The notes under the pieces are model-generated. The model saw only the letters and a program-made list of their open reading frames with translations, ran no database searches and was not told the origin of the DNA. A stretch of DNA of 64,000 bases from Macrostomum lignano. Lineage: Eukaryota. This document shows positions 11,056 to 61,830 of the stretch, one piece after another (within the stretch, counting starts at the first letter, position 1; each line of letters opens with the position of its first letter). The translations under genes and the position numbers were made by a program. The stretch covers positions 434,001 through 498,000 of the forward strand of contig NIVC01000247.1 in the NCBI GenBank assembly GCA_002269645.1. Direction: 5' to 3'.

Positions 11056-11872
<817 letters not shown>

Positions 11873-25706: not shown

Positions 25707-25739
<33 letters not shown>

Positions 25740-25866
25740 GTCTTAGTGTCTTAGTGTCTGTCTGTCTTAGTGTCTTAGTGTCTTAGTGTCTTAGTGTCTG
25801 TCTGTCTGTCTGTCTTAGTGTCTTAGTGTCTGTCTGTCTGTCTGTCTTAGTGTCTTAGTGTCTTAG

Positions 25867-25950
<84 letters not shown>

Positions 25951-26480
25951 GGAGTGTCTGTCTGTCTTAGTGTCTGTCTGCCATCTTAGTGTCTGTCTGT
26001 CTGTCTGTCCGTCGGAGTGTCTGTCTGTCTGTCTGCCGTCTTAGTGTCTGTCTGTCCGTCTTAGTGTCTGTCTGCCGTCTTAGTGTCTGTCTGTCCGTCT
26101 TAGTGTCTTAGTGTCTGCCTGTCTGTCTGCCGTCTTAGTGTCTGTCTGCCATCTTAGTGTCTGTCTGTTTGTCTTAGTGTCTGTCTGTCCGTCTTAGTGT
26201 CTTAGTGTCTGCCTGTTTGTCTGCCGTCTTAGTGTCTGTCTGTCCGTCTTAGTGTCTTAGTGTCTGCCTGTCTGTCTGCCGTCTTAGTGTCTGTCTGCCA
26301 TCTTTGTGTCTGTCTGTCCGTCTTAGTGTCTGTCTGTCCGTCTTAGTGTCTGTCTGTCCGTCTTAGTGTCTGTCTGTCTGCCGTCTTAGTGTCTGTCTGC
26401 CGTCTTAGTGTCTGTCTGCCGTCTTAGTGTTTTTCTGTCCGTCTTAGTGTCTGCTTAGTGTTTGTCTTAGTGTCTGTCTG

Positions 26481-26517
<37 letters not shown>

Positions 26518-29500
26518 GTCTGCATTCGAGTCTGTACTACAGTTCTGTTTTTTCTGCATATGTTTCCTCTCTCTATTAATGAAACTGGCCTTACAGAAGC
26601 ATTAAAAGAAAAACTGCAAAACGTGAATATTTGTCTGAAATTTATTGTCAACGTGGCGCTTCCAAAATAAGTGAGTAGGCTGAATAATCTGTGATAATTT
26701 TCCTATTGCCTGCCTATAGCCGTAGAAATGAGTACAGAGTTACATGTGGTGCTACTCAGAATGGCTAGCTACATTTAGTGAGCTGCTCAACTCATAAACT
26801 GATATAATATACCTACTTAATTACGTATCTAGGGACAGACAATGGACCTATATGATGCTGTTATTTTCAGCAGCCCCCGAGAGCAGTTGTAGAATCAAAG
26901 AAGCATCAATCTCACCCCGGCACGTGATGATTATTAGATTATAAAATGGCATCAAGGCTACCCAAAATAGCATTCTGAACATCCGTGAGGTTGCTCACCA
27001 TTGATTGCTCGCTAATATAATTGAATCCGTTTATGTAGATGCCAAGAAGAATAATGGTAGGACCAGCTGAAAACACGAAAATAATAGCATAAATAAGCCT
27101 TTTACATTAGTTTATGCTCATAATAAATAAAAAACCAGAAGTTTTAATTAAACCAAAAGATAATTAACAGAACAAATCACAAAAAAGGAAAATATTCGTT
27201 CCTTAACCACTGTCTGTGGCTAAAATAATTACACAAGCAGAGTACAGGCCAGTCATATAGACATTTTTATGAGTATTTCGGAAGTTGGTTTCATGCATAT
27301 AATGAATTCCACTTCATGATGGCTGTTATGACTTCGGCCATAGAACCATATCTATGCGAATGTGTGTATATTTTGAAAATTAATAGTACATTAATACCCA
27401 TGCTTTGTGGGCGTTAATGAGAAATCCTCGGACAAGGCCATACAGCGCCATAGACATTTGTGTCCTGGACAATTAGTGGGACAGAATAATCGGGCGTTAA
27501 ATGTCATAAAACCACTTTAAAGCTCACTTTCAGGGAGGTTATTGACATAGATTTTATTTCGCGGGATTTAATCGATCACTTTCCCGGACATATTGCAAGG
27601 ATTATTGTATGTATCCAAATAAGCGAGCTTCTCTCTTCTCTTACTTCGTGACTCAAGAAATTTCTTAATGAAATTTTGTCTATGGTAAGAATTTGGGGCT
27701 TCGCCCCCACACCCCCATCCCCAACTTCAACCATAGACATACAAGTATGGCTGCGGGATTTATCTGAATACATCCCGCAAAATTAAAGTAGTTTAAATAA
27801 GATATTCTATGGGTTTTTCGGTCGGATACCGACCTCAAACCCATAGAATATCTTATACTTAACTGCCCGCTAATTTGCATTAAAGTAAGTTTTTTAAGCA
27901 TTAAAGTCCTGCAAACGGGCTTAAATGTAGTCTATGGCATTAAAAGGCAAGAATAAGTGCCCAGCGGGCACAAAGGTCATGGTACAATTTAATTATATGG
28001 CCTTGTTTTAGCCGGATCAAAACGTTAATTTTGTCCTCATATGTCCAGAACCGATACTACAAGCTACATTAAAAAACTTAATACCTAAAACCAACAGAGC
28101 CATTGAATTAATTATCATTACAGATTTTAGAATTGCCAGGTCAAGTGGAAATTAGCCTATCAGAGCGCTTCCCAATATTAGCCCACATTGTTGCGCAATC
28201 ACAACGATGGATATAACTTGGACAGAGCAGCTGGGCATAAAGAGTACGAGCGTAATACACAGAATGAGTCTGCTACTTGAAATGACTATATGATTGCACT
28301 GGACTTGGTCTTTTTGCAACTAGTAATTTTTCTACCTGACCAGAGGAACCTATATCAAACTTCAAATCTCCAATCCAACACCTCAAACACGTTCAATTTA
28401 ACATCTGGCATGCGAACTCTCTCTCTATCTCTCTCTGCAATAAATTAGTCTCACTCAAACTCGGATGCGTTCTCTTGTTATAAGCGCTTGAGTCGACCAG
28501 TTTTTTGTAGAGTTCATAACTGAAATAATAATTATTAGACAAAATTAGACAGAAGATGTACAGTTCTAATAAAACACGCGATAAGCCGGTGCGGTCGTTA
28601 TTACGGGTGCAAAGTAAATTTACAACGACTATACAGTGCAGTGCTATGTATAAAAACTAAAAACTAATTAATTTTCTGCTGTTAATAGCAGGTGACACTG
28701 TGTGATAAACAGGCCGTATGAGCAAAGTTGTACCATTGGTCACAGGTCAATGCTTCTGCTCTGAGTTAGAGCAAGTGCTCAATTTTTGTATGAGCGTGTG
28801 AACAAAGATGTAGCTATGTGGAACTTTGAGCAAATTCTCATTCACCCGAACAGTTGCTCAGTTAATTGGAACCATAGACATAAATAGGTGTGAAAATCAA
28901 CTTCCTTTTCTTTACGGTTTAAAGTTCGCATTGGAAGCAAGCTGGTAGAAGAAATGTCGAGTCAAGACGAGAAGGACAAGATTTTCGTTCGGGCAGGTGG
29001 CTCTTCTTTTTGCAACAAATAACTCAGTCATGCTGACAGAGCAGTAGGAAATTATGATGCTGCTTATGGCCTGGGCAGGCCGTCGACTTTTGACTGAGAA
29101 AATGCGAAAAAATGCATTAAAACTTTTGTCTATGGGGCAGCGGTCGAAAAATTGTCTTATCAAAAGGGTCAGATAGAGAATCCAGAGCAAGACTGCAGCC
29201 AGAGGAGGGGAGAGAGAGGAATGGGAATAGAGAGGGGATAAGAGAGATAGGAGAAAGAGAGATGAGGGAATAGAGGAGAAGAGAGGAGAGGGGAGAGAAT
29301 GGTATGAGAAGGGAAATAAGAGGAGCGAAGAGAGAAGGAGAGGAGAGAAAAAGAGGAGAGAAGGAGAGGAGAGAAGGAGAGGAGAGAAGGAGAGGAGAGA
29401 AGGAGAGGAGAGAAGGAGAGGAGAGAAGGAGAGGAGAGAAGGAGAGGAGAGAAGGAGAGGAGAGAAGGAGAGGAGAGAAGGAGAGGAGAGAAGGAGAGGA

Positions 29501-30773
29501 GAGAAGGAGAGGAGAGAAGGAGAGGAGAGAAGGGAGAGGAGAGAAGAAGAGGATAGAAGGAGAGGAGAGAAGGAGAGGAGAGAAGAGAGAGGAGAGAAGG
29601 GAGAGGAGAGAAGAAGAGGATAGAAGGAGAGGAGAGAAGGAGAGGAGAGAAGGGAGAGGAGAGAAGGAGAGGAGAGAAGAGAGAGGAGAGAAGGGAGAGG
29701 AGAGAAGGAGAGGAGAGAAGGAGAGGAGAGAAGGAGAGGAGAGAAGGAGAGGAGAGAAGGAGAGGATAGAAGGAGAGGAGAGAAGGAGAGGAGAGAAGGA
29801 GAGGAGAGAAGGGAGTTGAGAAAGCAGAGGAGCGAGGAGAATAGAGAAAATAAGAGAGGACAGGAGAGAAGTGGAGTAGAGAGAAAAGGGGGATAAGAGA
29901 GGGAGAGGAGAATAGAGATGGGAGAGCCAAGAATTAAGAGGAGATTTGACTAGGGAGCAGAGAAGAACCAAACCTTGAGCGGCCCGGATTGCTATTTTGA
30001 TGTTTCAAAGGACCAGAGTTTATTCACACTGATGCGAGTCTCTACTCAGTCACAGGGCACTTGATCAAGATGTGAGCAGTGGCGTGATGATAGTTCTACT
30101 AGCTCGTAATATAGAAAAAAATAAGGAGAACAGATTTACAACGAGCATGCAAAGAAGAGTCTAGCAGATCACGCTAGCAACTGACTTTTATTCGGCGAGT
30201 TTCGCTTGTCGTACTTGGTTTCCGCAATAAAGCTAAAAAATGAACGGCTTTGTTTGGTCAAACTCCAATTCCGCAACAATTTCCGTGTTAGCTCAGTTCG
30301 CGTCTGCATTTTCTCATTTCCTTTCAAACGATTTTTAGGTAGCTTTATAAGCCTTATTTTGCCAAGTAGGTCGTTATTTACTGCCAAAAATCTTAGAACT
30401 GAAAGCGAACTGCTTGAATCCAATGAATATGAGAACGATTCAATGCAGTATAGAGACCATGCAGTTTTTTCCAGTGTCTGTGAGTTTACTTGAGAATAGT
30501 CATGTAAGCATGGATTAAGATAAATGAATGTCAACATAGTTCTTCTATCATATTCAATAAACAGACCTTTACAAAACTTTATTCAAAACTTTACACAAGA
30601 TTATCATTATGGGCAAAATTAAACAACACAAAGCAATGAATGGATTTAGCTTACCTTGTTATATTCATTACGCATTCTGCCGAGGCGCGGGAGAACAGAA
30701 TGCAGCAAATACCAACCACTGACAGCCTGATTGTCTGGCAGGGGCCGCTTGATTGACAGCTCCGGCCGTTCAT
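20862..30773 (-). CDS. Anion-selective Cys-loop ligand-gated ion channel subunit (glycine-receptor/GluCl-like), ~451 aa; complement(join(20862..21122,23015..23179,23446..23675,23806..23937,24249..24331,24941..25030,25499..25641,26999..27066,28455..28519,30655..30773))
   Basis: Signal peptide ([17 protein letters not shown]), YNKRTHP helix-1 motif, loop [12 protein letters not shown], Cys-loop [15 protein letters not shown], loop [15 protein letters not shown]1 [25 protein letters not shown] anion filter, TM3 [14 protein letters not shown] and TM4 [13 protein letters not shown]. All 9 introns are GT-AG with compatible phases. The 68-bp and 83-bp exons match sizes familiar from GABA/Gly receptor genes. 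Confidence 0.93.
21575..22335. repeat. G-rich 21-bp minisatellite (GGCAGGCCGGAGGCAGGGTGG)n in the last channel intron
   Basis: About 35 units with GGG/GGGG runs; source of four low-complexity pseudo-ORFs. Confidence 0.97.
25090..25430. repeat. 17-bp minisatellite (GAGCGTCTATAGATCTG)n, intronic
   Basis: Units visible between the channel exons at 25030 and 25499. Confidence 0.93.
25700..26520. repeat. Compound (TCTG)n/(GTCTTAGT)n satellite, intronic
   Basis: TCTG runs interspersed with CTTAGTGT; reverse-complement relative of the 15445-16495 array. Confidence 0.93.
27448..27937. mobile_element. Two adjacent probable MITEs bounded by CCATAGAC...GTCTATGG (27448-27685 and 27731-27937)
   Basis: Inverted 8-mer termini in the correct orientation, about 240 and 210 bp apart. 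No clear TSD. Confidence 0.4.
28872..29135. mobile_element. Probable MITE bounded by CCATAGACA...TGTCTATGG
   Basis: Same termini as 27448-27937, 264 bp apart. Confidence 0.4.
29200..29960. repeat. Polypurine satellite (GAGAGGAGAGAAG)n
   Basis: 13-bp purine units; gives LLSSPS/ERRRGE pseudo-ORFs. Confidence 0.96.
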
Positions 30774-30811
30774 TGACAGGTCGCTGAGGGATGGAGATAA
30801 GCTTGCTTGCT

Positions 30812-31075
<264 letters not shown>

Positions 31076-34000
31076 TTATATCTGTCTGTAAATTGGAACT
31101 ACACGACCAGCATGTCTAAATTTGACCCCAGAGGGACAAGTCAAATAAAGAAATTAGCTGCCTCGCTCCTGGGTGGTGTAATCTTGCATTCTGTAGTCAT
31201 ATTTTTAACAAACAATCTTAAAGAGTAAAGAGAATGGAAAAAGACTTGTAGGCCTACTAGTCGCCCAAGCAAGAGACCGCAATTTTGTTTGACTGTACAG
31301 ATTTCAACGCTCGAGCACAGGATTGTTGACCAGCCGAGGGCACACAGCGCGGCAATATTTGCCGGTCAAATTCGATCGAGAATGGGAGAGAAGACTAAAG
31401 ATAGGAGCGAACATATTGGCCCTGGCGGCAATGCTCAGAGGAAAGCCGACCCAGTCCACTCTGTTCAGGTTTCAGTCACACTATATTAGTCTCCCTGTGC
31501 CTTACTCTCGCAGCCAAATGGTCTTCCCTTATTTTCTGCTTTTAGATCGAGCTGTTGAACTGCGAGTTAGTTGCCTGCCTAATAGTGCACAGTGTAATTT
31601 CTGTATTGGTTTGCTGTTCTGTGCTTTTTTGGGCCTATGGTGTATTGTATATTGTTAAACCCTTAATACTTTAAAACGGAGTAAGATGCTCAAATGATTA
31701 CACTTCTGAGCATAAGTCTGAATCACCGATTCGCAGAAAGTATATTGGTATTTTTTGCTGTAATACACGCGAGACGTATTGAATATTCTAACGTTACTCG
31801 ATTTGAGGCCTTGTTATATGAAGTCTGACCATAGACTGAGACATTTTCCGTAGTAAGCGGAACATCCTACGGAAAAGAAGGGCCTACGGGAAAAAAGCTA
31901 GGTTAAATTCTAATTTGCATACAACTACAAGCTATGCATGCACTGTATAGTTTATTAAAGAATATACCAAATTATAGCAGTCCATATTTGAAAGTGCGCG
32001 CTCTTAATGGAAGCAGAGTTGTAGAAAAATTCTAATTTCTATCACCCTTTGGGAATTCGTTATTGACCTCTTAAATTCTGGTAGAAATTGCTTCAAGATA
32101 TCCTTTCCGCCTAATCCCATCTAACTCGGCAAGTTCGTTGAGCTGTTTGAGAAATTTTCCTTCCCCGGAGCGGGCAACAGTCATCGGGTCAAAGCCTCAT
32201 TTTGGCGCTAGTTTGAAAACTCGAGGATTAGAAATATTGTATCCAATAGTGAACTTGCAGTTGCGCGATTGGCGACCCCGTCGCAAGGAGACCCGGAAAC
32301 CAGAACCTGGAGTAAAGAAAATCTTCTCCCAGTCAAGTTTCTGTGTTGTATTTGACCCAATCTGTCTTTAGGTTCTGTTGGATTTGCATGTAAGCTTTGA
32401 TATCCGTTTTCTAACTTTGGCCCATAGTTTTCACAGACAGAGATTTGGAGAAGATCTGCTGCTCCAGAATCTGCTTCTGGGTGTCCTTGCACAGAGTCGG
32501 CAGGGGTGGACTGTGACTTGGGATATGAGGGAAGAAAAAAGATGGCGTGACTGAGGAGCCAAAGGGGAGCGGGGAAGCCGAGCACTTCAGTAGCCTTTTT
32601 TCGGCAAGAATTTCATGTAGGCAGAGAAAACCGCAGATCCCTGATATCGGCAGTAGAGATGACCCTGATAGCTGCATGGCTTGGAGCTGTGACGGGAGAA
32701 AAACGATTGTACCAATAAAGTCCTTAGCTTCCCATTGCAACGTTGCATTCGAAGCTTTTCGACTGGAATCAGCCCTGTCAAGGAGGTTTAGAACCAGATC
32801 TGGAGTAGGAACTCTAACCTCAGTCTATAATTTTTGCACGGCAGACAGCCGAATTTTTTTAATTCATTTTTTTGTTAAAATTATAATTTACTTTGAGTGA
32901 TTTATTACAACTAGGTCTGATTTGAAATCTGAGAGCTAGTTTAAACAAACCCAGAGAAAGTAAAAAGCCTACCATATTGAAATTTTTTGTTGAAAATTCC
33001 AATATTTCTTAAATTATTTTATTTGTAAAAGTTTCATTGGTAAATCTTTCGAATTTGAGAGTTGAGAGTTTGAGAGTTGCTATTCCAGGTTCTAGTTAAA
33101 GAACTTCTTGATCCAGAATCTTCGATAGTTGCTGCCCGCAGCAGCAGTGATTTATGACACCCCCGATTGGCCCTAGGAAGCTCAGTCTGGCGTGAAAGAC
33201 GGCCGGATATGTCTGTGAGTCGGTGGGAAAAAACTAAAATAGAACGGACCTACTAGCGCAATCCTTTGAATTGCATGGTTTTCTGCACTTATGCATGCGA
33301 TGCTTGAAACTGCCTGATTTTTTAATTGCTCTCTAGGGAATATTTCACAAATCAAGATTTTGGGAGATTATCCGCAAAGACGGATTAGAAGCTATATTAT
33401 GCCGGTAGCTACTCTTTGTAATAGATCGGTCTCTAAAAGCTGGGAAGAGTGCAAAATAATTTAACCTTTTTAACGTTGCCTCACAATATTGTGCAATGCT
33501 ACAGTAATTCTAATTCAGCACATTTCTCTTTTAAAGCATTTCAATAATCATTTTTATTGTATGAATAAACCTCCTGAGTATAATATTAATAAATTCCTAA
33601 TTTGAAAAGCAATTATTACAATAATCATATTAATCGTTTTATAAAGAAATAAATTGACAGAAAAAAATCTCTATTTTAAATGTTTTTATTTGTTTTAATA
33701 GATCCAAAATACTCGTAAATTCAGCCATCGTAGATCTTTGTGTAAGCTTCTCTGAATCGATTTCTTAGAATCGAATCATAAAATAATAATAAAGCTATAT
33801 GTGAATAAATTTTGGATTCATCACCCAATTGATGTTTTACTGCGATTTTTTTTCGTTTTAGGTATTCCATTGGAACTTTCGAATCGTCTTTAATTGAGAC
33901 TGTCTTTATACTTTTTCCGGAATTATGTACGAGTATATGTAAGCTAGTTTTCTATTGCGTTCAAACTAAAACCAGTGAAATTGGAACGGAGGAAGAAGTA

Positions 34001-40487: not shown

Positions 40488-42401
40488 GTGACCGCGTTTG
40501 AAATCAAACCGATCCTTTTGTAGAAACGATATTTAACTTACGACAAAGATTGTTGTCAGGATGGACTAAATTTTGATGACAACTCGGGTGACAGCTTGCC
40601 AACTTTGTCAAATTTGATCGCGAACAGGAATTGTCAATTCAAAGCCTGCAATTGCTTCCTCAAGAGAAAGGAATTCGCAGTCTTCTTGTAGAGCTCCGGA
40701 GCTGCCGAGTTTCACCGCTTTGCAGATGTCACCATGTCAGCTCAGATCTTCCTCCCGTTCTCTCAAAGTCAAAGACAAATTCTGCAACTCTACTCTCGTG
40801 CTGCTTCTTCTTGCTCTGCGTGTCTTCCTGGGTCTTTCTGTCGGGGGAATGCAGAACTTAAAAGAATCGGGCTGTCTAAGGGACTGACTATACACGGGAA
40901 AATTCTTAAGAAAACAGGACAAAAACACTGTTGTGCACAATAAAAAATTGGAAAGCAGAAGTTGAGGGGTTGGAAATGTAGGCGGAGGGGGGAGAGACTT
41001 ATTGTTGTCTTTTCTCAATTGATTTTCTATTCCGCCTCAACGTATTTCTCTCTCTGGAGGGAGCTTCCAACTGACTTTCAGGTGCTCGCTTCCGTCCTGT
41101 TCAAAGAAGAGAAATGTTTTTTGGTCTTGAAGGACTCCTGACTTATTGGCGGAGCCGAATCTTTCTTGGCCGTGACTAAGATTTCTTTGTTTCAGAATTA
41201 CAGTAGCTCCAGAGAGTCCCATAAACAGCTTCTATAGCCGAAGCAACATCAAAAATGGTTATTATATTGGCAAAAGCCCTCACTGGAGAGTCCTGGATTT
41301 CGAAAGATCCTCATTGGTCAGTCAGGAGATTTTATTCAAACAGGGCATTTCGATAGTCAGATGCAAGCGTGTCGTCAGTTTCCACCAATACTACTTCATG
41401 GCTATTAGTCAGTAGAATGACTGAACCTCGACTTGAATTTGGATGCGAAAATGCTTGACTCCGACACTAAATAGTAACAGAAAATGACTGTTTTAAAACT
41501 TTCACCCGAAAAGTAGTTGATTTGTTTATATAATTGTCAATTTTGTTCAAATAAAACAGTGGAGTAAGGTGCACTAAGTGCTATTTTACTGTTTTTAACG
41601 GGCATTTATATAAAAAATCGTACTCTGTAACGTTTTTGTCTGGTCAAGGTTCAGACCAGTAAATCGGGTTTTTAGAACAGAAAGATTTTGAATTTACTAC
41701 TTTTAAATAGTTTAAAAAGAGTGCAGAATCGTAGGAGAGAGCAAATAACGTACTAGCTGTGTACATGTAAAAGTTCAATGAGTTAGCTCTTAAAAAACAT
41801 CTTTAATGCAATAAAAAAAACAAGGAAAATACCAACAGACAGAAACATTTCAAATCTTTGTACTCGTAAAAGTTAAAATTTATGGCAGTGCATTTTAAAA
41901 AAAAATTCATTCGGGAAAGTTTACTGAATTTAAAAACTCATATGTCGTAGAAATTAAAGATTTTGGCGCTTTTCAAATACAATAGGATCGTTTAAAATTT
42001 CAAAAATAAACAGCGATGCAAAAAATTTGTTGAGAAAAAAGTTTATTAGCGTCCCCATGGATGAACGAATGGTTTTGGTTAAAAAAAATAGGCTCATTAA
42101 TAAATTGAATCGCACCTTAACTTTTGTTATTCTAGAGCTATAAGCCACATGCAGCTAGCGATTTTCATTTAAACCACTGCATAAAATGAAAATAGTCAGA
42201 TAGAAGTAATTCAAAGGAAGGACTTGTTTGTGCTTTTATGCTTTTCTTACTATGCTATTATATAACATGCCCATCAACAGATATTAAAACACGAAGCAAC
42301 CTTCGGAGAAGTTTCAATATTTAAAACAGCTCTTTGTCCTTGGCGTATCTTCCTGCACTTTCAACGTACTGAATAATATCTAATCCGATAGCCGTGTAAA
42401 T

Positions 42402-45400
42402 TCAACCGGTGCTGGTGATGCGGCGCTGCTGGGCCAGATTGTTGAGCATCTTCTCACGCTCGGCCTGCACCTCGCTGAGCGACAGTCGCCGACTACGCAG
42501 ACGGGCTGTCAGGCTCTTGATGACGTCGAAGGCGAAATCGACGTCTTTCTGTTCGGCGTGCGAGGTGCACACGAAGCGCAGGTAGTAGGTTGGCGGGTTG
42601 CCCGTCTCGGCCGCATTCAGGTGGATTCGTCCGTCGTCGCAGATCAGATTGTACAGCAGAGCGTTCACCGCGTCCGTGTCCTGGAGTAGTGGAATAGGCT
42701 GGTTGAGTCTTAATTGCTGGGATTGGGTCGAGCCAGATCGCAACTATAGTTTGAGATCAGCCTCAAAAGGTCAAGTTTGATATGAACATGCTCTTTCATG
42801 TTTACTGATTGCACAGACCAATGCTAATCCAACGGAGGTGCAATTGAGAGCAAAACTTACTCTTCAGTAAGCATTAGACGCGCCACTTACTAAAACTCCG
42901 GAGCCTGCGGACGAGCCATCTGGTCTGATGGGAAGCTGAAAGCGTGCGTGTGAGTTTTCGCTATAATGCTCATCTGTGTTGGTTGGATCAAGGACCACTA
43001 TAGTTAATAGCAGTAGTAAATCTAGTCTTAGTAGTCCTTGCACTGTGACTATTAAGTGCTGAAAAAAAGCTCTAATTACGTGTAGATGGATGGAAGATAT
43101 TGGTACTTGTGTTCGCAGTTGCTACGACTACAGTAATTTGAAGATTTGCTACCCGCGTAAATGTGTATGATTTATGCTCTATGAGCGTAGTTCTAATGTT
43201 TGCTAAAACCTTTCAAAGCTCAATTCCTGAGCGCATTGATTCAGCCTCACCTTCACCCGAAAAGTCACCAAGCCGAGACTCTTGGTCAGCACCTCGAACT
43301 CGGGGTCGGCACCCATTCTCTCTGCGAAATGGTCGGCCATCTGGACATGATGTCGCAGCGACTTGCGAAGGCCCTGCAGGCCCATGCTGCGCAGGACGAA
43401 CCAGATTTTCAGGGCGCGAAATCGACGACCCAGTGGAATTTCCCAGTGCCGATAGTCTGGGATGCCCTGCTCCTTGAAGATCTTCATCAGCTTTAGCCCC
43501 GACAGCAGGTCCTCCTGTTATGTTGATGAGAATGCCCCTAGATTATATACTCAGAAAAAACAATGGCTAATCCCACACCCCAGTAAAAGTAACGGGCTTT
43601 TTGTGCTAAAGCCCGTGGTGCTAAAGACCCTGGTGCTGGCGCCCCTGATGCTAAAGACCCTTGTGCTGACGTCCCTAGTGCTAAAGACCCGGGTGCTAAA
43701 GCCCCTGGTGCTAAAGCCCCTGGGCCACTAAAAACCCTGGCTAACCCCAACCTGTTGAACTACAAGTCTAAGCTAAAGGGTCCAAACTCTCACCTTCAAA
43801 CCGTCAAACAAATCTTCCACGCATCGCAGGAACAGTGCGGAGCAGTCAAAGTTGACGTGCATCATTTTGTGCGGATTGAAGTTGAAAGAATCGGCGTATT
43901 CAATGCCACGCATCAGCGGTCGGTATTCTGGGCAGAATAGGAAAGCTCCGGCGTACGCAGCGTCGATGTGGAGCCAGATGCGCTCGGACATGCCTGTAAA
44001 TAATTGATTAATGGCGCGGAATCGATAAGATGAGGCTCTCTACGAAAATTAACCTACAGGAATATGTCTCTCTGCATAACAATTAGAAAATCTTCTGTTG
44101 ATATATTTCTTGTGCTAAAATGGCTTCTTACTCACGTAAAAATCTGAAATGTATTCAATTTTTATTAGCTCTACTCACAGACAGGTCCAATCTCCTCAAC
44201 TGGGTCAAAGTCACAGCTGCTGGTGGTTCCAAAGCTGCCGCACACCTGGGCGGTGGTCATTAAAAAGTTGCAGTAAAAAAAGGGAAACAAAAAGTGTTTT
44301 GTTTTCGCAACACAGATTGTAAACACGCAATACTACTATCAAAGTAAAAGAGTAGTGTGCTCAGGTAGATATCTTGTTAGGCCAGTTTTCTGTGGCAATG
44401 AATGTCAAGAACTCGTGAGGTACATGCAGATTTCTTTGTTGCTAAAAATAGAAACCCCAAAATTGTTTGCATTAGTAGCCACATGCGAAACATGGTTTGG
44501 GAAAAGTTCCTGTATGAATCATAGTCTGTTGATTAAAGCTTTTTGTAACTGTTCGCAATGTCATGAGTGCTATGAATCAAAACTGAATTTGAGCTGACGA
44601 CAATCGAGCGCATGTATTTTTAGGTGTTCCCATGACGAAAGAATAATAAATAGACTTCAATTTTGCTAAAGTTTTTTGCTAAAAGACAGTTCTATCTCTG
44701 AAACTCAACTGCAGCCATGGGCAGCTCCGTTTTCTCAGTGGGTGGCAAGCCTTGACCAAGAAATGCAAAGAGAGGTTAAGAAGAGTGTGAAAGCTAAATA
44801 CGTCAAGAGCCTTTCAGCCTTGGACATTAAAGGTACATTGGGAAGGACAGAGGGGACTGCTTTGAGCTCGGAGACTATCATGGATCAGCTGAAAAAGCGT
44901 GGCACTTGAGAATGCTAAGCCGACCTGGCAGTCATGACGAGCCCTGAGACTCGGACTCTGTTTGAGGCCCACCCCTGCAGCCTCGGAGCGCCGGAGCTGA
45001 GTCTGCGCGAGAACGAGTTGTGAGCTCACTGTCTAGTGAAAACAGAACTCAGGCGCCTTCTTTGGCTGTCTGGGAGAAAGGACGGGGAGAGAGAAAATAG
45101 AGGAGGGGGACGAGTACCGCCGCCAGGGTAAAAGCAAACATTGCATTAGGCAAACAGTGCGTTATTTCAGAGACGGAGAGAGAGAGAGAGAGAGCTGTGT
45201 TGTCTGTCTCCTAGACGACTGCTTTCCAAGCAATATCGTTGCAGCAGAACAACAGAAGACGTCATTGGGGGCACTCTGTTTGAGATAAGCCAATCAGACA
45301 TGTGCTTTTTTCTGTCACTAAAGTAGATGAGAATAGTCAAAGTATGCTCAATCCATTATGTCTGAATTATGTCCCGAATGGTAAAGTATTAAAAGAACAT

Positions 45401-47218
45401 TCACGCTGCTTTAAGAACTGACTAATTAATTTTGTTTTAAAAAGGACGACGAAAGTTATTCTGAATACTTAAGAGTGGAAATTGAATGATTTAGATGGCT
45501 CATTATTCTTTCAGCACTAAGTACGTCAGATAAGCATAAACCAGGCTAGTTTAGTTAAGAAATCGTGGTTAATTATTCCTGTTCAGAATATTTTTTTCGT
45601 AAATATCAATAATATTCTTGTCATTTTTGGTGGTTTCTAAACAGACTGCAATCATGTTTACCCACTCACGAAGAAGGGAATTCGTCCCTTGGCCTTGTCC
45701 TCTTCCACAGCTTGGACAAATTCCTTTCGATTTAGCGAAGTTCGGCCTTCCGGCAGATGCAGACGACGAATCTCGATGCCAATGAAGGAGGCGTTTCGAA
45801 CGATCATGGAGTGCGTCTGCGATGGAGATGAGGGAATTGATGGGTCAGTTTTATTCCAACTCCGTCGATTGACCGATTTCGACCGTAATTAGGAAGAAAA
45901 TCTAGATAATATTTTACCTGATCGGTTGAGTAGCAAACGAGTCTGGAGAAGGCATCGAAATATCCGGATTCCGGATGCTCCTTCAGCCAGTCTTTGATAG
46001 CCCGCTCTCGAGCAGCCAGCATGCAGGTGAGAGTCGACTCAGTCGCAGTTCCGTGTATGACAGCACCGCCTGTTTCCGAGGTGGACAAGAAGTGACTCGG
46101 CAGGTCCATGGCCTTCACCATCCAGTCGCAGACGATGACCTCAAGCTCCGTGGCAGCCGGGCTGGCGATCCAGGAGAAGCCTACGCAGCCGATGGCCGAC
46201 GAGAGCAGATCGCCAAGGATTGATGGATAGGAGTTCAACGACGGATAGTAGGCGTGAAAGTTTGGGTGGTTCCAGTGGGTGATCTGCGGTGGATCGTGTA
46301 GTTGAAATTGGTTTTTTTGAGTTGAGTTTACAATTTTGCATGTTTTAAACATCAGTCGCTAGAACATTTGTTTTGCTTTGGTGTCTTTGGAACACAGTTT
46401 TTGAAGTTAAGTAAACTTCAAAAATATTTTGACAATTATTTAGTTTCTTCTATCCGTCACATATTTGCAGGATTTGTCATGTTGATAAGGACAACCCGAG
46501 GCACAGAGTTCGCACATATCAGACGACGAGAACAATAACGACTGAAGTACTTTTTTATGTCTAGGGATTAGAAAAATGGCAATAGCTTCTTGTCTTCTTA
46601 GTGGCTGCGGGTCTCCCTATAAGCGTCAGTACACTAAAGCCCCTGCGAAAAAAACTGACAAAAATATGAGACAAAGAATAGATGCAATCCTTAAGTTTGG
46701 AAACAACAAGCCATGGTTTGCTTCTGCGAGCAGGCCCACAACCAAGCAAACTATTTTGAAGACGTTGGAGAATACAAAAGTAGCCTTGAATAACGCACCC
46801 CGGGCATGATCTTGGACTCTACGTCCTCCATCACTTTTTCGAAGTCTTCGGGCCGCTCTGGCGCGGCGCCTGGCAGCAGATCGCGCAGGTAGCCCGGCTG
46901 CACATTGGGCAGTACGGGCCGATCGCCAATGTTCTCCAAGTAGTCAGCCACGTAGTCCACCATCTGCTTGCCGACGCGCCGAAAAGTCGCCGTGTCCATG
47001 CCGCGCTTGATGTCCACCTTGACGTCGTTTTCCTCGCCTCCGTTTTCGTCCGCCGTCGGATCCGGCAGCGCGGCTTTGGCAGACTCGGCGGAGTCCAGAC
47101 CTAGGGCGGCCATGGAGTGCGACAGGCCGTTCTGACTGCCGTTCAAACTGCCGTTCTGGCTGACGACAGCAGCAGCAGCAGCCTCTTTCTGTTGGTTTTG
47201 GTTGGAAACAGATGTCAT
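42402..47218 (-). CDS. Group II PLP-dependent aromatic-L-amino-acid decarboxylase family protein (DDC/TDC/HDC-like), ~580 aa; complement(join(42402..42680,43251..43514,43794..43993,44179..44245,45670..45816,45918..46283,46799..47218))
   Basis: MDTATFRRVGKQMVDYVADY...V.PGYL; ITHWNHPNFHAYYP; GFSWIASPAATELE; GTTSSCDFD; WLHIDAAYAG; PLP-lysine motif NPHK; DYRHWEIPLGRRFRALKIWFV; LVTFRVK; YYLRF. All six introns are GT-AG and phase-compatible. Confidence 0.93.
43603..43745. repeat. ~16-bp array (GGTGCTAAAGACCCT)n in a decarboxylase intron
   Basis: About 8 units; shares the GTGCTAA core with 4281-4682. Confidence 0.85.
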
Positions 47219-48859
47219 TACAGGGAAACTTCCGGCTTCAAGCAACTTGATTCTTTAGTACTCAGAATTTTGTAAAAAGTAGACAATTTAGCTGAGTGAG
47301 TCAATACCTACCAAAAGGTGCGAAAGTTGGGCCTTATATATGATGAGTCGTGCCCCCGAATCCTACCATCCCACCCACTCAAAGAAGGAGCTCAATTCCA
47401 TTCGCAGAGAATTGTTTGCTCGCTACAGCGCGAATGCGTTGGGTCGCTGTGAAGGTTAAACAAAATTTGACACCGAGAGGTCGCAGGGCGGCTATCAATT
47501 TTTTGAAATGCTTGGCAGCAAAAAGACAACCCGGCTCATATTTCAGCGCTTAGAGATGTTTGCATACTTTATTCAAGATGCGAGTAGTTTGTGCTCCCTC
47601 TTGAAGATGTATTGTTTTTTAATTTTCTTTTGTTTTCTTAGCATACGCAAATATCTATATGAGCTACTTTGGGTGAAGAATGATTTTATTAAATCTGAAA
47701 TCCGGCTTTCACCAACTTACCTTCATCTTGGAATACATAGTCAAACTTAAAATTAAACTACCAAAGTCTGTGTTAAAAAATCTTGTTCAGTTGAAACCTT
47801 TTCCCTGCGATGCTGTCGGAACTCTGATGCGTCTGTTCTCTGACGGACTTCGCGATCAAGTCTATTTAAACTAGTCTCATAACCCGACCGTCTCTCTTTC
47901 TCAAGCCACTTGGTCACAGGGGCTCCTGTCCGATTGCTTTGCGAAAGAATGAAGCCTGGTCGGAGCTCGCTTGAAGAGAGAGAGGGAAATATACACAAAA
48001 AAGTTTGACGTATTTGACTAAGAAGGACTCGGCTTCCAAAGCCCACGTATTTGGACTTATAAGACTGATGACTAGAAACCCAAGAAGGTACGTTACTTCA
48101 AGTGGTTACAGAGTAAACTGCTAAATACACACGATCAGATGGCCCAAGAGCAGTTCAAACAGAGTAAACTGATTCTTCCCTGAGAACTGGCTGCCTCTAT
48201 ACCGGGTGCTCCGCCCCATCTGTGTGTAGAGTTCTCAGAACACAGTAAAGTGGCATCCATTAACAAGCACTACAGCCTGATGCCTGCTCTTCTCAAGTAC
48301 GGGTATTATGCGTTACTAAACCGATTCCCATGAAACTAAATCAAGCAAGTTGCTTCATCTTGATACCCACTCATACTTATCTTGTCTCGGTGACATCAAC
48401 ACATTTTCTTTTGCCAAATTTGGTATCTATTTTTGCTATCGTGAAAACTAGTGGATGTCGCCTCCGTGGATTGGGGAGCTGTCATGTCAGTTGCTTTTGG
48501 TGTAATTTACAATATTCTTAGTATATTTTCTTTTTAAAACATGAGTTCGAGCAGGATTTCTTTTTTGACGAACGTAAAGCAATGAATACAGTGGAAAATA
48601 ATGAGGCATGTAACATGGGTCTGCGCCGTGTCAGTTTGTGTCGAATGATGATGATCGAGCTTTTCGGATCTCGGTGCAGGCACCATTTATCCTAAATTTC
48701 TGGGATCCTATCCTAGTTGTAAGAATGTGACTGGGGCTACTTAAACTCTAGGCAAAGTTTTTATCTGCCTACGGTTGCTACATGTACGAGCACCGTACGA
48801 GCAACTCGTATATTATAGCATTTTCCAAGCCAGTCGATCCTAAGAACAAGCAATGATAG

Positions 48860-49660
48860 TTTGTGTCTATGGCATTGTATTAGTTCGATTGTGTCTGTGG
48901 CTCTGTATTAGTTAGATTGTATCTAAGGCATTGTATTAGTTAGTTTGTGTCTATAGCTTTGTAAGTTAGATTGTGTATATGTCTTTGCATTAGTTAGATT
49001 GTGTCTGTGGCTTTGTATTAGTAAGATTGCGGATTTGCGTCTATGGCTTTGTATTAATTAGTTAGATTGTGTCTGTGGCTTTGTATTACTTAGATTGTGT
49101 CTATGGCATTGTATTAGTTAGATTGTATCTATGGCTTTGTATTAGTTAGATTGTGTCTATGGCATTGTATTAGTTAGATTGTGTCTATGGCATTGTATTA
49201 GTTAGATTGTGTCTATAGCATTGTATTAGATAGATTGTGTCTATGGCTTTGTATTAGTTAGATTGTGTATACGGCTTTGTATTAGTTAGATTGTGTATAT
49301 GGCTTTGTATTAGTTAGATTGAGCCTGTGGCTTTGTATTAGTTCGATTGTGTTTGTGGCTCTGTATTAGTTAGATTGTATTTAAGGCATTGTATTAGTTC
49401 GATTGTGTCTGTGGCTTTGTATTAGTTAGATTGTGTCTGTGGCTTTGTATTAGTTAGATTGTGTCTGTGGCTTTGTATTAGTTAGATTGTGTCTATGGCA
49501 TTGTATTAGTTAGATTGTGTCTATGGCTTTGTATTAATTAGTTAGATTGTGTTTATGGCTTTGCATTAGTTAGATTGTATCTATGGCTTTGCAATAATTA
49601 GTTAGATTGTGTATATGGCTTTGTATTAGTTAGATTGTGTCATTAGTTTTGCATTAGTTA
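48860..49660. repeat. 28-bp minisatellite (GTATTAGTTAGATTGTGTCTATGGCTTT)n
   Basis: Directly visible, about 28 units. Confidence 0.95.
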
Positions 49661-50050
49661 GACAATGCTAGCTCGTAGATTGCGTCCTATGCTTTTGGAG
49701 CTCGAGTGACTAAAATCAACAATTTTTCATCTATAAAAAATCATATGCACAAGCACAATGTTTCACAAATGTGTTTTAGTTAGCTTAAATAAAGATTTCG
49801 GAGCGAGCTAGTGTGGGGCAAGCTCATACTGACTCCTTTGATTAGTAAGAGCTAAAGTGGACATGCACCGACATCAACCCATGCTAACTTCAATTTGATC
49901 AATACAAAGTATAATACTCGTATGTAAGGCACAATCAACTCCAATGCTGGATATTAAGTTACATTAGTGGCTGTGTCAGTCTGAAATGTGTCTATCAAAT
50001 GAATCAATGAATCAAGGGAACAGTAAGAGTACCACGTACTCGTCACAAAA

Positions 50051-51288
<1,238 letters not shown>

Positions 51289-54984: not shown

Positions 54985-55424
54985 TCATTCTCGCTCCACC
55001 ACCTGTCCACCGGGGCTCATCTCCTTCACCTCCTGGGCGTCCTGCACCAGCGCGCACAGCGGGCAGCAGAGGTGCACGAAGAAGTCGCCAATGAAGCTGC
55101 CGTTGATGCCCTGCTTCTCGCGGATCTTGCCGCGGACGATGGCGCCAACGCAGGGTGAAACGAACAGGAAGGCCAGGCCGCACAGAACGCAGCTGTCTCC
55201 GACGGCCTCGGCGTTCTTGCCGAAGGTGTAGCAGGGCACGAAGTAGGTGATGATGCACAGGCCTGACCGAATGTGGAATCATAGAATTTTGACAATAAAT
55301 TGAGTTACTATTTCAAAGTTTGAACTTTTCAATTTTACAATATTTTACAAAGGCCTAAGACTCGGACTTAAGTCTCACCGCAGTCATCGAAGCATCCACA
55401 GAGTCCGTGCTTGAAGTCCGCCAT
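54985..55424 (-). CDS. PLAC8/cornifelin-family cysteine-rich protein, 107 aa; complement(join(54985..55262,55379..55424))
   Basis: MADFKHGLCGCFDDCG|LCIITYFVPCYTFGKNAEAV...RGKIREKQGINGSFIGDFFVHLCCPLCALVQDAQE contains the family motifs (GLCGCF.DC, CPC.TFG, R.KIR....I.GS...D, CCP.CAL.Q). Phase-1 intron G|gtgaga...ggtcag|GC. Confidence 0.92.
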
Positions 55425-55504
55425 TGATCCTGCTTTCTGTATTGTCAATATTAACCTTCAAGGCAGGTAGAAGCTACGAAGTCCTTCGTGTGTGGCCGGC
55501 TGGA

Positions 55505-55695
55505 ACTGGAAGGCGGGCAGAGCGGGGATCGGGTCGGGGAATTTCGCCGCCCCACTTGGCTTTTTCAAGTCGCCCGCCCCTGGTTGAGGTGGGGAGGGGG
55601 TAGCGACCGCACTGCCTCAGGAGGGTGAGAGCTTGGAGCGGGAGAGAGCAGGAAGGAACGGGACAGGCTGATTTCGTACGTCTCCATTGGTGAGT
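55505..55695 (-). promoter_or_regulatory. Putative promoter of the PLAC8-like gene (GC boxes, CCAAT box)
   Basis: CCGCCCC/CGCCCGCCCC motifs (about 55547, 55571) and ATTGG (about 55685) in a CpG-rich patch just upstream of ATG 55424. Confidence 0.35.
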
Positions 55696-60669: not shown

Positions 60670-61830
60670 CAAATGGGAGACGGAGGGAGAGTCAATAGGG
60701 AGACGGAGAGTCATATGGGATAGGGAGAGAGTCTTATGGGAGACGGAGAGTCATATGGGAGACGGAGAGTCATATGGGATAGGGAGAGAGTCTTATGGGA
60801 GACGGAGAGTCAATAGGGAGATGGAGAGTCATATGGGATAGGGAGAGAGTCATATGGGAGACGGAGAGTCATATGGGAGACGGAGAGTCATATGGGAGAC
60901 GGAGAGTCATATGGGAGACGGAGAGTCATATGGGAGACGGAGAGTCATATGGGAGACGGAGAGTCATATGGGAGACGGAGAGTCATATGGGAGACGGAGA
61001 GTCATATGGGAGACGGAGAGTCATATGAGAGACGGAGAGTCATATGGGAGACGGAGAGTCATATGGGATAGGGAGAGAGTCATATGAGAGACGGAGAGTC
61101 ATATGGGAGACGGAGAGTCATATGGGAGACGGAGAGTCATATGGGAGACGGAGAGTCATATGGGAGACGGAGAGTCATATGGGAGACGGAGAGTCATATG
61201 GGAGACGGAGAGTCATATGGGAGACGGAGAGTCATATGGGAGACGGAGAGTCATATGGGAGACGGAGAGTCATATGGGAGACGGATAGTCATATGGGAGA
61301 CGGAGAGTCATATGGGAGACGGAGAGTCATATGGGAGACGAAGAGTCATATGGGAGACGGAGAGTCATATGGGAGACGGAGAGTCATATAGGATAGGGAG
61401 AGAGTCATATGGGAGAGGGAGAGTCATATGGGAGACGGAGAGTCATATGGGAGACGGAGAGTCATATGGGAGACGGAGAGTCATATGGGAGACGGAGAGT
61501 CATATGGGAGACGGAGAGTCATATGGGAGACGGAGAGTCATATGGGAGACGGAGAGTCATATGGGAGAGGGAGAGAGTCATATGGGAGACGGAGAGTCAT
61601 ATGGGAGACGGAGAGTCATATGGGAGACGGAGAGTCATATGGGAGACGGAGAGTCATATGGGAGACGGAGAGTCATATGGGAGACGGAGAGTCATATGGG
61701 AGACGGAGAGTCATATGGGAGACGGAGAGTCATATGGGAGACGGAGAGTCATATGGGAGACGGAGAGTCATATGGGAGACGGAGAGTCATATGGGAGACG
61801 GAGAGTCATATGGGAGAGGGAGAGGGAGAG
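60670..61830. repeat. 19-bp minisatellite (GGGAGACGGAGAGTCATAT)n
   Basis: About 60 units; MGDGESYGRRRVIWETESH pseudo-ORFs. Confidence 0.98.

What the first reader, a model, noticed from the sequence alone, without database searches (positions are those of the whole stretch)
43440..43880. Aromatic amino-acid decarboxylase homologue with no tyrosine in the catalytic loop: candidate aldehyde synthase/oxidative deaminase or pseudo-enzyme
Seen: the spliced product from the PLP lysine onward reads NPHKMMHVNFDCSALFLRCVEDLFDGLK|EDLLSGLKLMKIFKEQGIPDYRHW, with no Tyr between NPHK and DYRHW. The 279-bp intron is mostly a tandem array and showed no plausible extra Tyr-coding exon. Established: DDC/TDC/HDC carry an essentially invariant Tyr in this mobile loop (human DDC Y332, ..DPTYLKH..) that protonates the carbanion. 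Tyr-to-Phe there turns these enzymes into aldehyde-producing oxidative deaminases (DDC Y332F, plant aromatic aldehyde synthases). Inference: depending on alignment the equivalent residue here is Phe (KIF) or Ser, while the PLP Lys, DAAY Asp and His192-equivalent are intact. The enzyme probably binds PLP but may not make a biogenic amine.
Basis: partly seen in the sequence, partly recalled or inferred. Interest (0 to 1): 0.75.

Follow-up and report, generated by a model that had tools for sequence, protein, structure and literature searches.

The report
Flatworm DOPA-decarboxylase paralogue without catalytic tyrosine
The flatworm Macrostomum lignano keeps, under strong purifying selection, an extra copy of the dopamine/serotonin-making enzyme whose mobile active-site loop has been rewritten and has lost the tyrosine needed to finish amine synthesis, so it probably makes something other than an amine, most likely an aromatic aldehyde.

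Summary
The window is Macrostomum lignano contig NIVC01000247.1. On its minus strand lies a complete GT-AG gene (42402-47738). It encodes a 576/580-aa group II PLP decarboxylase (Pfam PF00282, E 1e-119; pig, human and fly DDC, E about 1e-141).

The exon 5/exon 6 junction at 43794|43514 is the one used in the RNA-seq-derived GenBank annotation at all three genomic copies. The 43 residues between NPHK and DYRHW contain no Tyr. All 112 full-length and 27 short homologues examined have it.

No hidden exon can restore it. The intron is a length-variable 15-nt minisatellite (279 nt in two copies, 472 nt in the third).

Every other catalytic or PLP-binding residue is kept: K303, D271, H192, T246, N300, H302 and G354.

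The gene is not decaying. Across the three copies the enzyme domain carries 17 synonymous and 0 non-synonymous differences (dN/dS about 0.03).

The loop carries a tandem octapeptide (EDLFDGLK|EDLLSGLK) that straddles the only intron not shared with the canonical M. lignano DDC. No orthologue above 48% identity exists in about 15 billion proteins.

The most likely function is a decarboxylation-dependent oxidative deaminase (aromatic acetaldehyde synthase). This would be reached by a route different from plants (Tyr to Phe) and insects (His to Asn). It is untested.

The parts
47721..47738 (-). Annotated first coding mini-exon (MYSKMK), donor AAG|GTAAGT
   Evidence: Joined to 47188-46799 and the downstream exons it reproduces P0001 exactly. 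An in-frame ATG at 47218 inside the annotated first intron would give a 580-aa variant.
46799..47188 (-). Exon 2 of the annotated model: a disordered low-complexity N-terminal extension, then the start of the DDC fold (MDTATFRR..IMPG)
   Evidence: AlphaFold pLDDT is below 50 for residues 1-61. All 3 non-synonymous differences between gene copies fall here.
45918..46283 (-). Exon carrying the substrate pocket (W144, Y152, Y153, S155, V174, F176) and the phosphate loop (T219-A220-T221)
45670..45816 (-). Exon starting with the small-loop His264 (human H192; codon 45811-45813) in the diverged motif THSMIVRN (consensus AHSSVERA)
44179..44245 (-). Exon with T319 (human T246)
43794..43993 (-). Exon 5 of the 7-exon model: DAAY Asp344, N373, H375, the PLP Lys376 (43866-43868) and M377 (human W304). 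It ends with the first octapeptide EDLFDGLK; donor AAG|GTGAGA.
43515..43793 (-). Intron in the catalytic-loop coding region, 279 nt. It is the only intron of this gene not shared with the canonical M. lignano DDC paralogue.
   Evidence: Its length is 279/472/279 nt in the three gene copies; the 193-nt difference is not a multiple of 3.
43603..43723 (-). 15-nt minisatellite inside the intron (unit GGGKCTTTAGCACCA on the gene strand, 8.1 copies)
43251..43514 (-). Exon 6. It begins with the second octapeptide EDLLSGLK, then LMKIFKEQGIP (rewritten large loop, no Tyr; K408 at 43491-43493, L409 at 43488-43490), then the conserved DYRHWEIPLGRRFR.
   Evidence: AlphaFold pLDDT is below 50 for LSGLKLMKI.
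42402..42680 (-). Last exon: the C-terminal small domain plus a roughly 30-residue helical tail absent from ordinary DDCs, and the stop codon

Best explanation
This is a transcribed, selectively maintained paralogue of aromatic-L-amino-acid (DOPA) decarboxylase, so far seen only in Macrostomum lignano, where it has three near-identical genomic copies. Shown: it keeps the full DDC fold, the PLP-binding machinery (Lys376 Schiff base, Asp344, His264, Thr319, Asn373, His375, phosphate loop) and a DDC-type aromatic pocket (Trp144, Tyr152, Phe176, Gly429). Its mobile large loop has been rewritten. An octapeptide from the anchoring helix is present twice (EDLFDGLK|EDLLSGLK), a lineage-specific minisatellite intron sits between the two copies, and the catalytic Tyr is gone, with Lys/Leu at its column. 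Inferred mechanism: the enzyme still forms the external aldimine with an aromatic L-amino acid and decarboxylates it. Without the loop Tyr the quinonoid carbanion is not efficiently protonated at C-alpha. It then reacts with O2, giving the aromatic acetaldehyde (for example DOPAL or 4-hydroxyphenylacetaldehyde), NH3 and H2O2. That would make it a decarboxylation-dependent oxidative deaminase (aromatic acetaldehyde synthase). The sequence route differs from plants and fungi (Tyr to Phe) and from insects (His192 to Asn).
For: Gene and junction: clean GT-AG exons. They are identical to a GenBank model that was built only from RNA-seq assemblies. The same loop is present at three loci. Family and fold: PF00282 E 1e-119; DDC structures E about 1e-141; AlphaFold model pLDDT 83, TM 0.93-0.96 to DDC, HDC and DHPAA synthase structures. 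Catalytic residues other than Y332 are all conserved. Tyr is present in 112/112 and 27/27 homologues. Among 147 diverse 50%-cluster representatives there are 115 Tyr and 11 Phe (the known aldehyde-synthase state), with only a handful of aliphatic residues. Purifying selection: 17 synonymous and 0 non-synonymous differences in codons 74-553 among the three copies, P about 2e-11 under neutrality; dN/dS about 0.03; intron divergence 0.9-2.6%. Established chemistry: DDC Y332F abolishes amine formation and yields DOPAL plus NH3; plant Tyr/Phe swaps interconvert decarboxylase and aldehyde synthase.
Against: No enzymology and no expression pattern are available. The loop is rewritten, not point-mutated. 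Proteolytic or structural loss of loop function in DDC also lowers decarboxylation itself (my recollection of the DDC literature, not checked here), so turnover may be very slow. His264 is intact, and some authors regard this His as the proton donor in insect and plant enzymes. Three or four loop lysines could serve as a substitute acid. The protein deviates at 36 of 180 columns that are at least 90% conserved, the most of the 113 sequences, so substrate or reaction may have shifted further than the analogy assumes. No orthologue is available to show that the Tyr-less state is old.
Confidence: 0.4

Rival explanations
1. It is still an amine-forming decarboxylase. Another group, such as His264, a loop lysine (Lys400, 408, 411 or 414), Cys391 or water, protonates C-alpha, possibly with a new substrate preference.
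For: His264 and the whole pocket are conserved. His192 has been proposed as the proton donor in insect and plant AAADs, and His/Asn swaps give mixed activities. HMMER and BLOSUM alignments place a Lys exactly at the Tyr column. Strong purifying selection is compatible with any catalytic function.
Against: Y332F in mammalian DDC abolishes amine formation although His192 is present. All 139 closer homologues keep Tyr, which suggests it is not easily replaced. The flank of the small loop that positions His264 has itself diverged.
Confidence: 0.25
2. It is a selected but catalytically dead or single-turnover protein. It could be a PLP- or substrate-binding pseudo-enzyme, a regulatory partner that heterodimerises with the canonical DDC, or an enzyme that protonates C4' and inactivates itself to PMP plus aldehyde, as in GAD65-like abortive transamination.
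For: The loop is rewritten and predicted with low confidence. The count of deviations at conserved columns is the highest in the family sample. N- and C-terminal extensions are absent from ordinary DDCs. Under anaerobic conditions Y332F DDC converts PLP to PMP.
Against: Every PLP-contacting and substrate-contacting residue is retained with zero non-synonymous change among copies. That is hard to explain for a protein that needs no chemistry.
Confidence: 0.2
3. It has a different reaction or substrate class altogether, for example oxidative deamination of pre-formed amines or a non-aromatic substrate. The helical duplicated loop would then act as a new lid.
For: DDC itself oxidatively deaminates aromatic amines as a side reaction. 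Coordinated changes occur at W304M, S194M, E196V and A198N and in the loop.
Against: Pocket residues that define aromatic specificity are DDC-like (W71, Y79, F103, G354).
Confidence: 0.1
4. It is an artefact or a dying gene: a mis-assembled or mis-spliced model, a hidden Tyr-coding exon, or a pseudogene.
For: One copy (g3) has a 1-nt deletion in exon 1. An older UniProt model (P0008) shows frameshifts. An alternative in-frame acceptor exists at 43466.
Against: Three independent loci give the identical loop. The annotation is transcript-derived. The intron has no DDC-like open exon and varies in length by 193 nt between copies. tblastn finds no match to the human loop anywhere in the 64 kb. dN/dS is about 0.03.
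Confidence: 0.05

Closest known systems
Animal DOPA/aromatic-L-amino-acid decarboxylase (human/pig DDC, Drosophila Ddc; PDB 1JS3, 3RBF, 3K40)
   Same: 47% identity over 474 residues, the same fold (TM 0.93-0.96), the same PLP and pocket residues including G354, and the DYRHW..PLGRRFR motif. Five intron positions are shared with the canonical M. lignano DDC.
   Different: The large-loop Tyr332 is absent and the loop is 2-5 residues longer with a duplicated octapeptide. W304 is Met. The small-loop flank reads HSMIVRN. There are about 70 extra N-terminal and about 30 extra C-terminal residues.
Plant and fungal aromatic acetaldehyde synthases (AtPAAS 6EEI, Rr4HPAAS 6EEQ, Petunia PAAS) and the engineered DDC Y332F / HDC Y334F
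   Same: The catalytic loop has no Tyr hydroxyl while the small-loop His is kept. This is the state shown experimentally to divert the quinonoid to O2 and give aldehyde, NH3 and H2O2.
   Different: Those enzymes have a conservative Tyr-to-Phe change in an otherwise normal loop. Here the loop sequence is replaced, with Lys or Leu at the column and Phe413 4-5 residues away. The protein is an animal DDC relative, only 35-40% identical to the plant enzymes.
Insect DHPAA synthase (alpha-methyldopa-resistant protein, PDB 6JRL)
   Same: An animal DDC paralogue that makes an aldehyde instead of an amine. Similarity to the window protein is comparable (E 5e-134).
   Different: The insect enzymes keep the loop Tyr and change His192 to Asn (SDQSNSS in P0121 and P0127). 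The flatworm protein does the opposite.
Orphan AAAD paralogues of unknown function in other invertebrates (for example C. elegans hdl-1)
   Same: An extra AAAD-family gene beside the neurotransmitter-synthetic ones, with no assigned product.
   Different: No orthology is shown. hdl-1 was not compared residue by residue here.

Membership tests
Group II PLP-dependent decarboxylases (Pfam PF00282), AAAD/DDC branch | Full-length match to the Pyridoxal_deC domain and to solved DDC sequences | tested here: met
   PF00282 E 1.2e-119, profile positions 1-375 of 375. 1JS3, 3RBF and 3K40 at E about 1e-141.
Group II PLP-dependent decarboxylases (Pfam PF00282), AAAD/DDC branch | Schiff-base Lys in N-P-H-K, Asp binding the pyridine N, His stacking on PLP, Thr246, and the phosphate-binding residues | tested here: met
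   K376, D344, H264, T319, N373, H375 and T219-A220-T221 align with human K303, D271, H192, T246, N300, H302 and S147-A148-S149.
Group II PLP-dependent decarboxylases (Pfam PF00282), AAAD/DDC branch | Catalytic Tyr on the mobile large loop (human Y332, ..DPxYLKH..) | tested here: not met
   There is no Tyr between NPHK and DYRHW. K408 or L409 sits at the column. Tyr is present in 139 of 139 closer homologues.
Group II PLP-dependent decarboxylases (Pfam PF00282), AAAD/DDC branch | Fold-type I, DDC-like three-domain architecture | tested here: met
   AlphaFold pLDDT 83.4, pTM 0.81. Foldseek TM (target-normalised) 0.93-0.96 to DDC and HDC.
Group II PLP-dependent decarboxylases (Pfam PF00282), AAAD/DDC branch | Produces an aromatic amine plus CO2 | not testable with these tools
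   Needs an enzyme assay.
Aromatic acetaldehyde synthase, plant/fungal type | Phe in place of the large-loop Tyr in an otherwise conserved loop | tested here: not met
   Lys or Leu sits at the aligned column. The only Phe of the loop proper (F413) is 4-5 residues downstream, and the loop sequence is unrelated to ..P.FL...
Aromatic acetaldehyde synthase, plant/fungal type | Small-loop His retained while the loop Tyr hydroxyl is missing | tested here: met
   H264 is present and the loop has no Tyr.
Aromatic acetaldehyde synthase, plant/fungal type | O2-dependent formation of aldehyde, NH3 and H2O2 from the amino acid | not testable with these tools
   Needs an enzyme assay.
Insect DHPAA synthase (AMD) type | Asn in place of the small-loop His192, with the loop Tyr retained | tested here: not met
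   His264 is retained and Tyr is absent. AMD-like hits show SDQSNSS plus IYLKH.

The most novel reading that the evidence does not exclude
This would be a third, independent evolutionary route by which an animal AAAD stops making amines. Replacement of the whole catalytic lid by a duplicated helix segment, linked to the birth of an intron, would give a flatworm-specific aromatic aldehyde synthase or an enzyme with a still different PLP reaction. A possible role is protein cross-linking or sclerotisation (eggshell, stylet) or a non-amine signalling metabolite.
Probability: 0.35. Interest if true: 0.65.

Novelty: new variant of a known kind. Interest (0 to 1): 0.5.

Why it matters
The loop Tyr is the best-established switch between amine synthesis and aldehyde synthesis in this enzyme family. 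Natural Tyr-less members are characterised in plants and fungi, and animals are so far known to use a different switch (His to Asn in insects). A strongly conserved, transcribed, Tyr-less DDC paralogue in a genetically tractable flatworm (transgenesis and RNAi are available) offers two things. It is a direct test of whether animals also use the loop route. It is also a test of what a wholesale lid replacement does to PLP reaction specificity. It warns as well against counting every 'aromatic-L-amino-acid decarboxylase' annotation as a monoamine-synthetic gene when neurotransmitter repertoires are inferred from flatworm genomes.

Tried and rejected
1. Hidden Tyr exon. All in-frame AG..GT segments of the intron were enumerated. 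The only ones with Tyr are 61-66 aa of repeat-derived GALAP.. sequence ending KARYFYWG. tblastn with human DDC finds nothing for residues 329-342 anywhere in the window. Rejected.

2. A second AAAD gene in the window: none.

3. Orthologues that share the loop. Three word-index searches (full length, C-terminal half, 86-aa loop segment) and one exhaustive HMMER scan of 1.84 billion representatives found nothing above 48-55% identity outside M. lignano. Whether related Macrostomum species share the loss could not be tested, because their genomes are not in these collections.

4. Phylogenetic placement. NJ with Kimura distances put the protein on a long branch (0.50 against a median of 0.12) next to TDC-like sequences. 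Only 25% of bootstraps made it sister to the canonical M. lignano DDC. Shared rare residues gave no clear partner. Raw identity is marginally highest to the canonical paralogue, at 51.8%. Unresolved.

5. Expression data. Mlig023106 appears in no paper text and in none of the supplements I could search.

6. Fossil-codon idea for the intron start: suggestive statistics but a confounded reading. Left as unexplained.

7. The P0008 model with a frameshifted exon 6 was judged a flawed model from the older assembly, not evidence of an isoform.
Full report
**What is at the coordinates**

The finding lies in a minus-strand gene. Reading 42000-50500 on that strand and joining seven exons gives one open 580-aa frame. 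Every exon is bounded by canonical AG|..|GT. The exons are 47218-46799, 46283-45918, 45816-45670, 44245-44179, 43993-43794, 43514-43251 and 42680-42402.

[quoted passage not shown] GenBank PAA87139.1 (BOX15_Mlig023106g2, here P0001) is 100% identical. The locus is on contig NIVC01000247.1 of assembly GCA_002269645.1.

The annotated CDS uses an upstream 18-nt mini-exon (47738-47721, MYSKMK) spliced to 47188. With that exon my reconstruction equals P0001 residue for residue. Residue numbers below follow the 580-aa model; P0001 numbering is 4 lower.

**The observation**

None of the 43 residues between NPHK and DYRHW is Tyr.

The junction is more than an ab initio guess. The GenBank annotation of this assembly was produced exclusively from RNA-seq (StringTie/TACO assemblies plus a mapped de novo transcriptome, with ORFs called by TransDecoder; PMC5730564). 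The models at all three genomic copies use the same junction.

The intron is 279 nt. A 15-nt minisatellite (43603-43723, 8.1 copies) occupies 121 nt of it, preceded by degenerate older units.

**Could a Tyr be hidden?**

- tblastn with human DDC finds all exons of this one gene and nothing for human residues 329-342 anywhere in the 64 kb.
- Among the in-frame, stop-free AG..GT segments of the intron, the only ones containing Tyr are 61-66 residues of repeat-derived GALAPGALAP... ending KARYFYWG. They have no resemblance to a DDC loop.
- The intron is 279, 472 and 279 nt in the three gene copies, because the array differs in copy number. The 193-nt difference is not a multiple of three, so the intron is under no coding constraint.
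- An alternative in-frame acceptor (cag|GGC at 43466) would give ..DGLK|GIPDYRHW. A weak donor after Cys391 would remove the first octapeptide. Neither adds a Tyr.

**How unusual is it?**

In an alignment of P0001 with 112 full-length homologues, all 112 have Tyr in ..DP[LIV]YLKH... These include DDC, TDC and AMD-like sequences from many phyla, and the canonical M. lignano DDC (P0030..ADPIYLKH..). All 27 short homologues retrieved with the loop segment have it too.

In a much more diverse sample of 147 representatives of 50%-identity clusters from an exhaustive HMMER scan, the column breaks down as follows:

| State at the Tyr column | Count |
|---|---|
| Tyr | 115 |
| Phe (the known aldehyde-synthase state) | 11 |
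| Leu | 2 |
| Val | 2 |
| Ile | 1 |
| Ala | 1 |

The remaining rows are gaps, mostly truncated models, a few other residues in badly diverged loops, and the query itself.

The residue aligned with Y332 depends on the method. It is Lys408 by HMMER and BLOSUM62, Leu409 by MAFFT, and Ser405 only if one counts gap-free from NPHK. Phe413 is 4-5 residues further on. This is not a Tyr-to-Phe switch.

**What is conserved**

- The protein matches Pfam PF00282 over the whole profile (E 1e-119). It matches pig, human and fly DDC at E about 1e-141, insect DHPAA synthase at 5e-134, and HDC at 2e-126.
- Pairwise alignment to human DDC gives 47% identity over 474 residues. Retained residues are K303, D271, H192, T246, N300, H302, the phosphate loop (TAT for SAS), W71, Y79, F103, G354 (Ser in HDC and TDC), R347, R355, R358 and R447. 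T82 is Ser, F80 is Tyr and I101 is Val.
- An AlphaFold2 model built on the 113-sequence alignment has mean pLDDT 83. Most of the core scores above 90. The first 61 residues are disordered. An extra C-terminal helix is predicted. Confidence is low (below 50) exactly at LSGLKLMKI.
- Foldseek gives target-normalised TM-scores of 0.93-0.96 to DDC, HDC and DHPAA-synthase structures.

**What has diverged**

P0001 departs from the consensus at 36 of the 180 columns that are at least 90% conserved among the other 112 sequences. That is the highest count in the set. The median is 3, and the canonical M. lignano DDC scores 16. The departures cluster in three places:

- the flank of the small catalytic loop (AHSSVERA becomes THSMIVRN);
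- just after the PLP lysine (W304M);
- the large loop.

The loop contains a tandem octapeptide, EDLFDGLK followed by EDLLSGLK, with 6 of 8 residues identical. Such an adjacent repeat appeared in 0 of 5000 shuffles of the domain sequence. The intron lies exactly between the two copies. At the DNA level the copies share only 13 of 24 nt, so the duplication is old or the similarity is maintained at the protein level.

Mapping the canonical paralogue (Mlig011750.g2, locus L004) shows two things. Five of the six domain introns of the window gene lie at positions shared with it. The loop intron does not. The canonical gene instead has an intron at DYR|HW, 22 codons downstream. The loop rewrite therefore coincides with a gene-specific intron.

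**Is the gene alive?**

The assembly holds three copies: g1 on NIVC01001377.1, g2 in this window and g3 on NIVC01003130.1.

- Exons are 98-100% identical.
- In codons 74-553 there are 17 distinct synonymous differences and no non-synonymous one. The three amino-acid changes all lie in the disordered N-terminal extension.
- With 23% of sites synonymous, 17 of 17 has a probability of about 2e-11 under neutrality. For g1 against g2, dS is 0.029 and dN is 0.00075, a ratio of about 0.03. Intron divergence is 0.9-2.6%.
- The loop peptide is identical in all three copies, and one of the synonymous differences lies inside it (Phe396, TTT/TTC).
- Copy g3 has a 1-nt deletion in a CCC run of exon 1. This may be an assembly error or an inactivated copy.

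The protein is under strong purifying selection, which rules out a decaying pseudogene.

**Relatives**

Nothing closer than 48-55% identity exists outside M. lignano in three word-index searches and one exhaustive search. Distance trees place the protein on a long branch without a stable sister. I cannot say whether it is a recent Macrostomum-specific duplicate of DDC or an older paralogue. I also cannot check whether sister species share the loss.

**Mechanism**

Established knowledge comes from papers read here. In AAADs the large-loop Tyr closes over the external aldimine and protonates the C-alpha carbanion, assisted by the small-loop His. [quoted passage not shown] Tyr/Phe swaps interconvert plant decarboxylases and aldehyde synthases. 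Insects and some plants reach the same outcome through His to Asn. HDC Y334F structures are listed in the PDB.

My inference is that the flatworm protein binds PLP and an aromatic L-amino acid, decarboxylates it, and lacks the normal proton donor. The most likely products are then the aromatic acetaldehyde, NH3 and H2O2. I give this 0.4. The alternatives are:

| Alternative | Probability |
|---|---|
| A substitute acid (His264 or a loop Lys) preserves amine formation | 0.25 |
| A selected but non-catalytic or self-inactivating protein | 0.2 |
| A different reaction | 0.1 |
| Artefact | 0.05 |

**Comparison with the known, and verdict**

It works like an AAAD/AAS. It belongs to Pfam PF00282 and the DDC branch by sequence, fold and cofactor residues, but it fails the defining catalytic-Tyr test. 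It is not a member of the plant-type AAS group (no Phe, rewritten loop) nor of the insect DHPAA-synthase group (His retained). I rate it a new variant of a known kind and of moderate interest. It is worth an enzyme assay and an in situ, but it is not categorically new.

Noticed in passing
window 43770-43793 (minus strand), the first about 30 nt of the loop intron: Reading through the donor gives K|VRVWTL*LRLVVQQVG in frame, and LDPL in the +2 frame. GTT tg GAC CCT t TAG CTT AGA CTT resembles the canonical V-D-P-L-Y-L-K-H with the Tyr codon as TAG. A composite nucleotide pattern for this occurs twice in 128 kb of both strands (null 0.62), once exactly here. The ungapped 8-mer scores in the top 0.28%. 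The same stretch also looks like degenerate units of the 15-nt minisatellite, and a neutral relic should have decayed if the rearrangement is old. It may be a fossil of the ancestral loop codons or chance.
   Followed up: partly
window 43794-43817 and 43491-43514 (minus strand): The tandem octapeptide EDLFDGLK|EDLLSGLK straddles the intron (6/8 identical; 0 of 5000 shuffles), but only 13/24 nt are identical. Its origin is unexplained. Candidates are a duplication of the anchoring-helix end replacing ..VDPLY.., or selection for an amphipathic repeat.
   Followed up: partly
L002:6004-6475 versus window 43515-43793: The loop intron is 472 nt in gene copy g1 and 279 nt in g2 and g3, because the 15-nt array has more copies. 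It is a minisatellite polymorphism between homeologous copies.
   Followed up: yes
L003, exon 1 (CDS nt 309): Copy g3 has a 1-nt deletion in a CCC run (GTACTGCCCAATG to GTACTGCCAATG). Its GenBank model therefore starts at a downstream Met and is 451 aa. It may be a real inactivation of one copy or an assembly error.
   Followed up: no
window 43466: An alternative in-frame acceptor (gagcag|GGCATC) would remove EDLLSGLKLMKIFKEQ and give ..DGLK|GIPDYRHW. An older UniProt model (A0A1I8F9A8, P0008) seems to use it on a frameshifted assembly copy. No read-level evidence is available.
   Followed up: partly
window 55060-55577 (minus) and 24940-32512 (minus): The neighbours on the same strand are a PLAC8-domain gene upstream and a Cys-loop ligand-gated ion-channel gene downstream. 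Older UniProt models fuse each of them to the decarboxylase (P0006, P0278). This probably reflects the polycistronic transcriptional units described for this species.
   Followed up: partly
window 7577-9772 (minus) and 17517-18359 (plus): A long single ORF encodes a PPEF/rdgC-type Ser/Thr phosphatase with IQ motif and EF-hands. A second ORF encodes a purple acid phosphatase fragment.
   Followed up: no
whole window, e.g. 50050-51288 (AACT)n, 48857-49662 (28-nt unit), 11045-11872 (TGTC)n, 60686-61824 (19-nt unit): The window is packed with micro- and minisatellites: 42 TRF rows with score at least 200. This fits the 15% tandem-repeat content reported for this genome.
   Followed up: no
proteins P0354, P0380, P0327, P0362, P0415: A few unnamed AAAD-family cluster representatives from other organisms also have an aliphatic residue (Leu, Val, Ile, Ala) at the catalytic-Tyr column with His192 kept. 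They may form an uncharacterised class of Tyr-less, non-Phe AAADs.
   Followed up: no
window 46999-47188 and 42402-42500 (minus): About 70 N-terminal residues are disordered and Ala/Asn/Gly/Ser-rich. About 30 C-terminal residues form a predicted helix (SLSEVQAEREKMLNNLAQQRR). Neither has a counterpart in ordinary DDCs.
   Followed up: no
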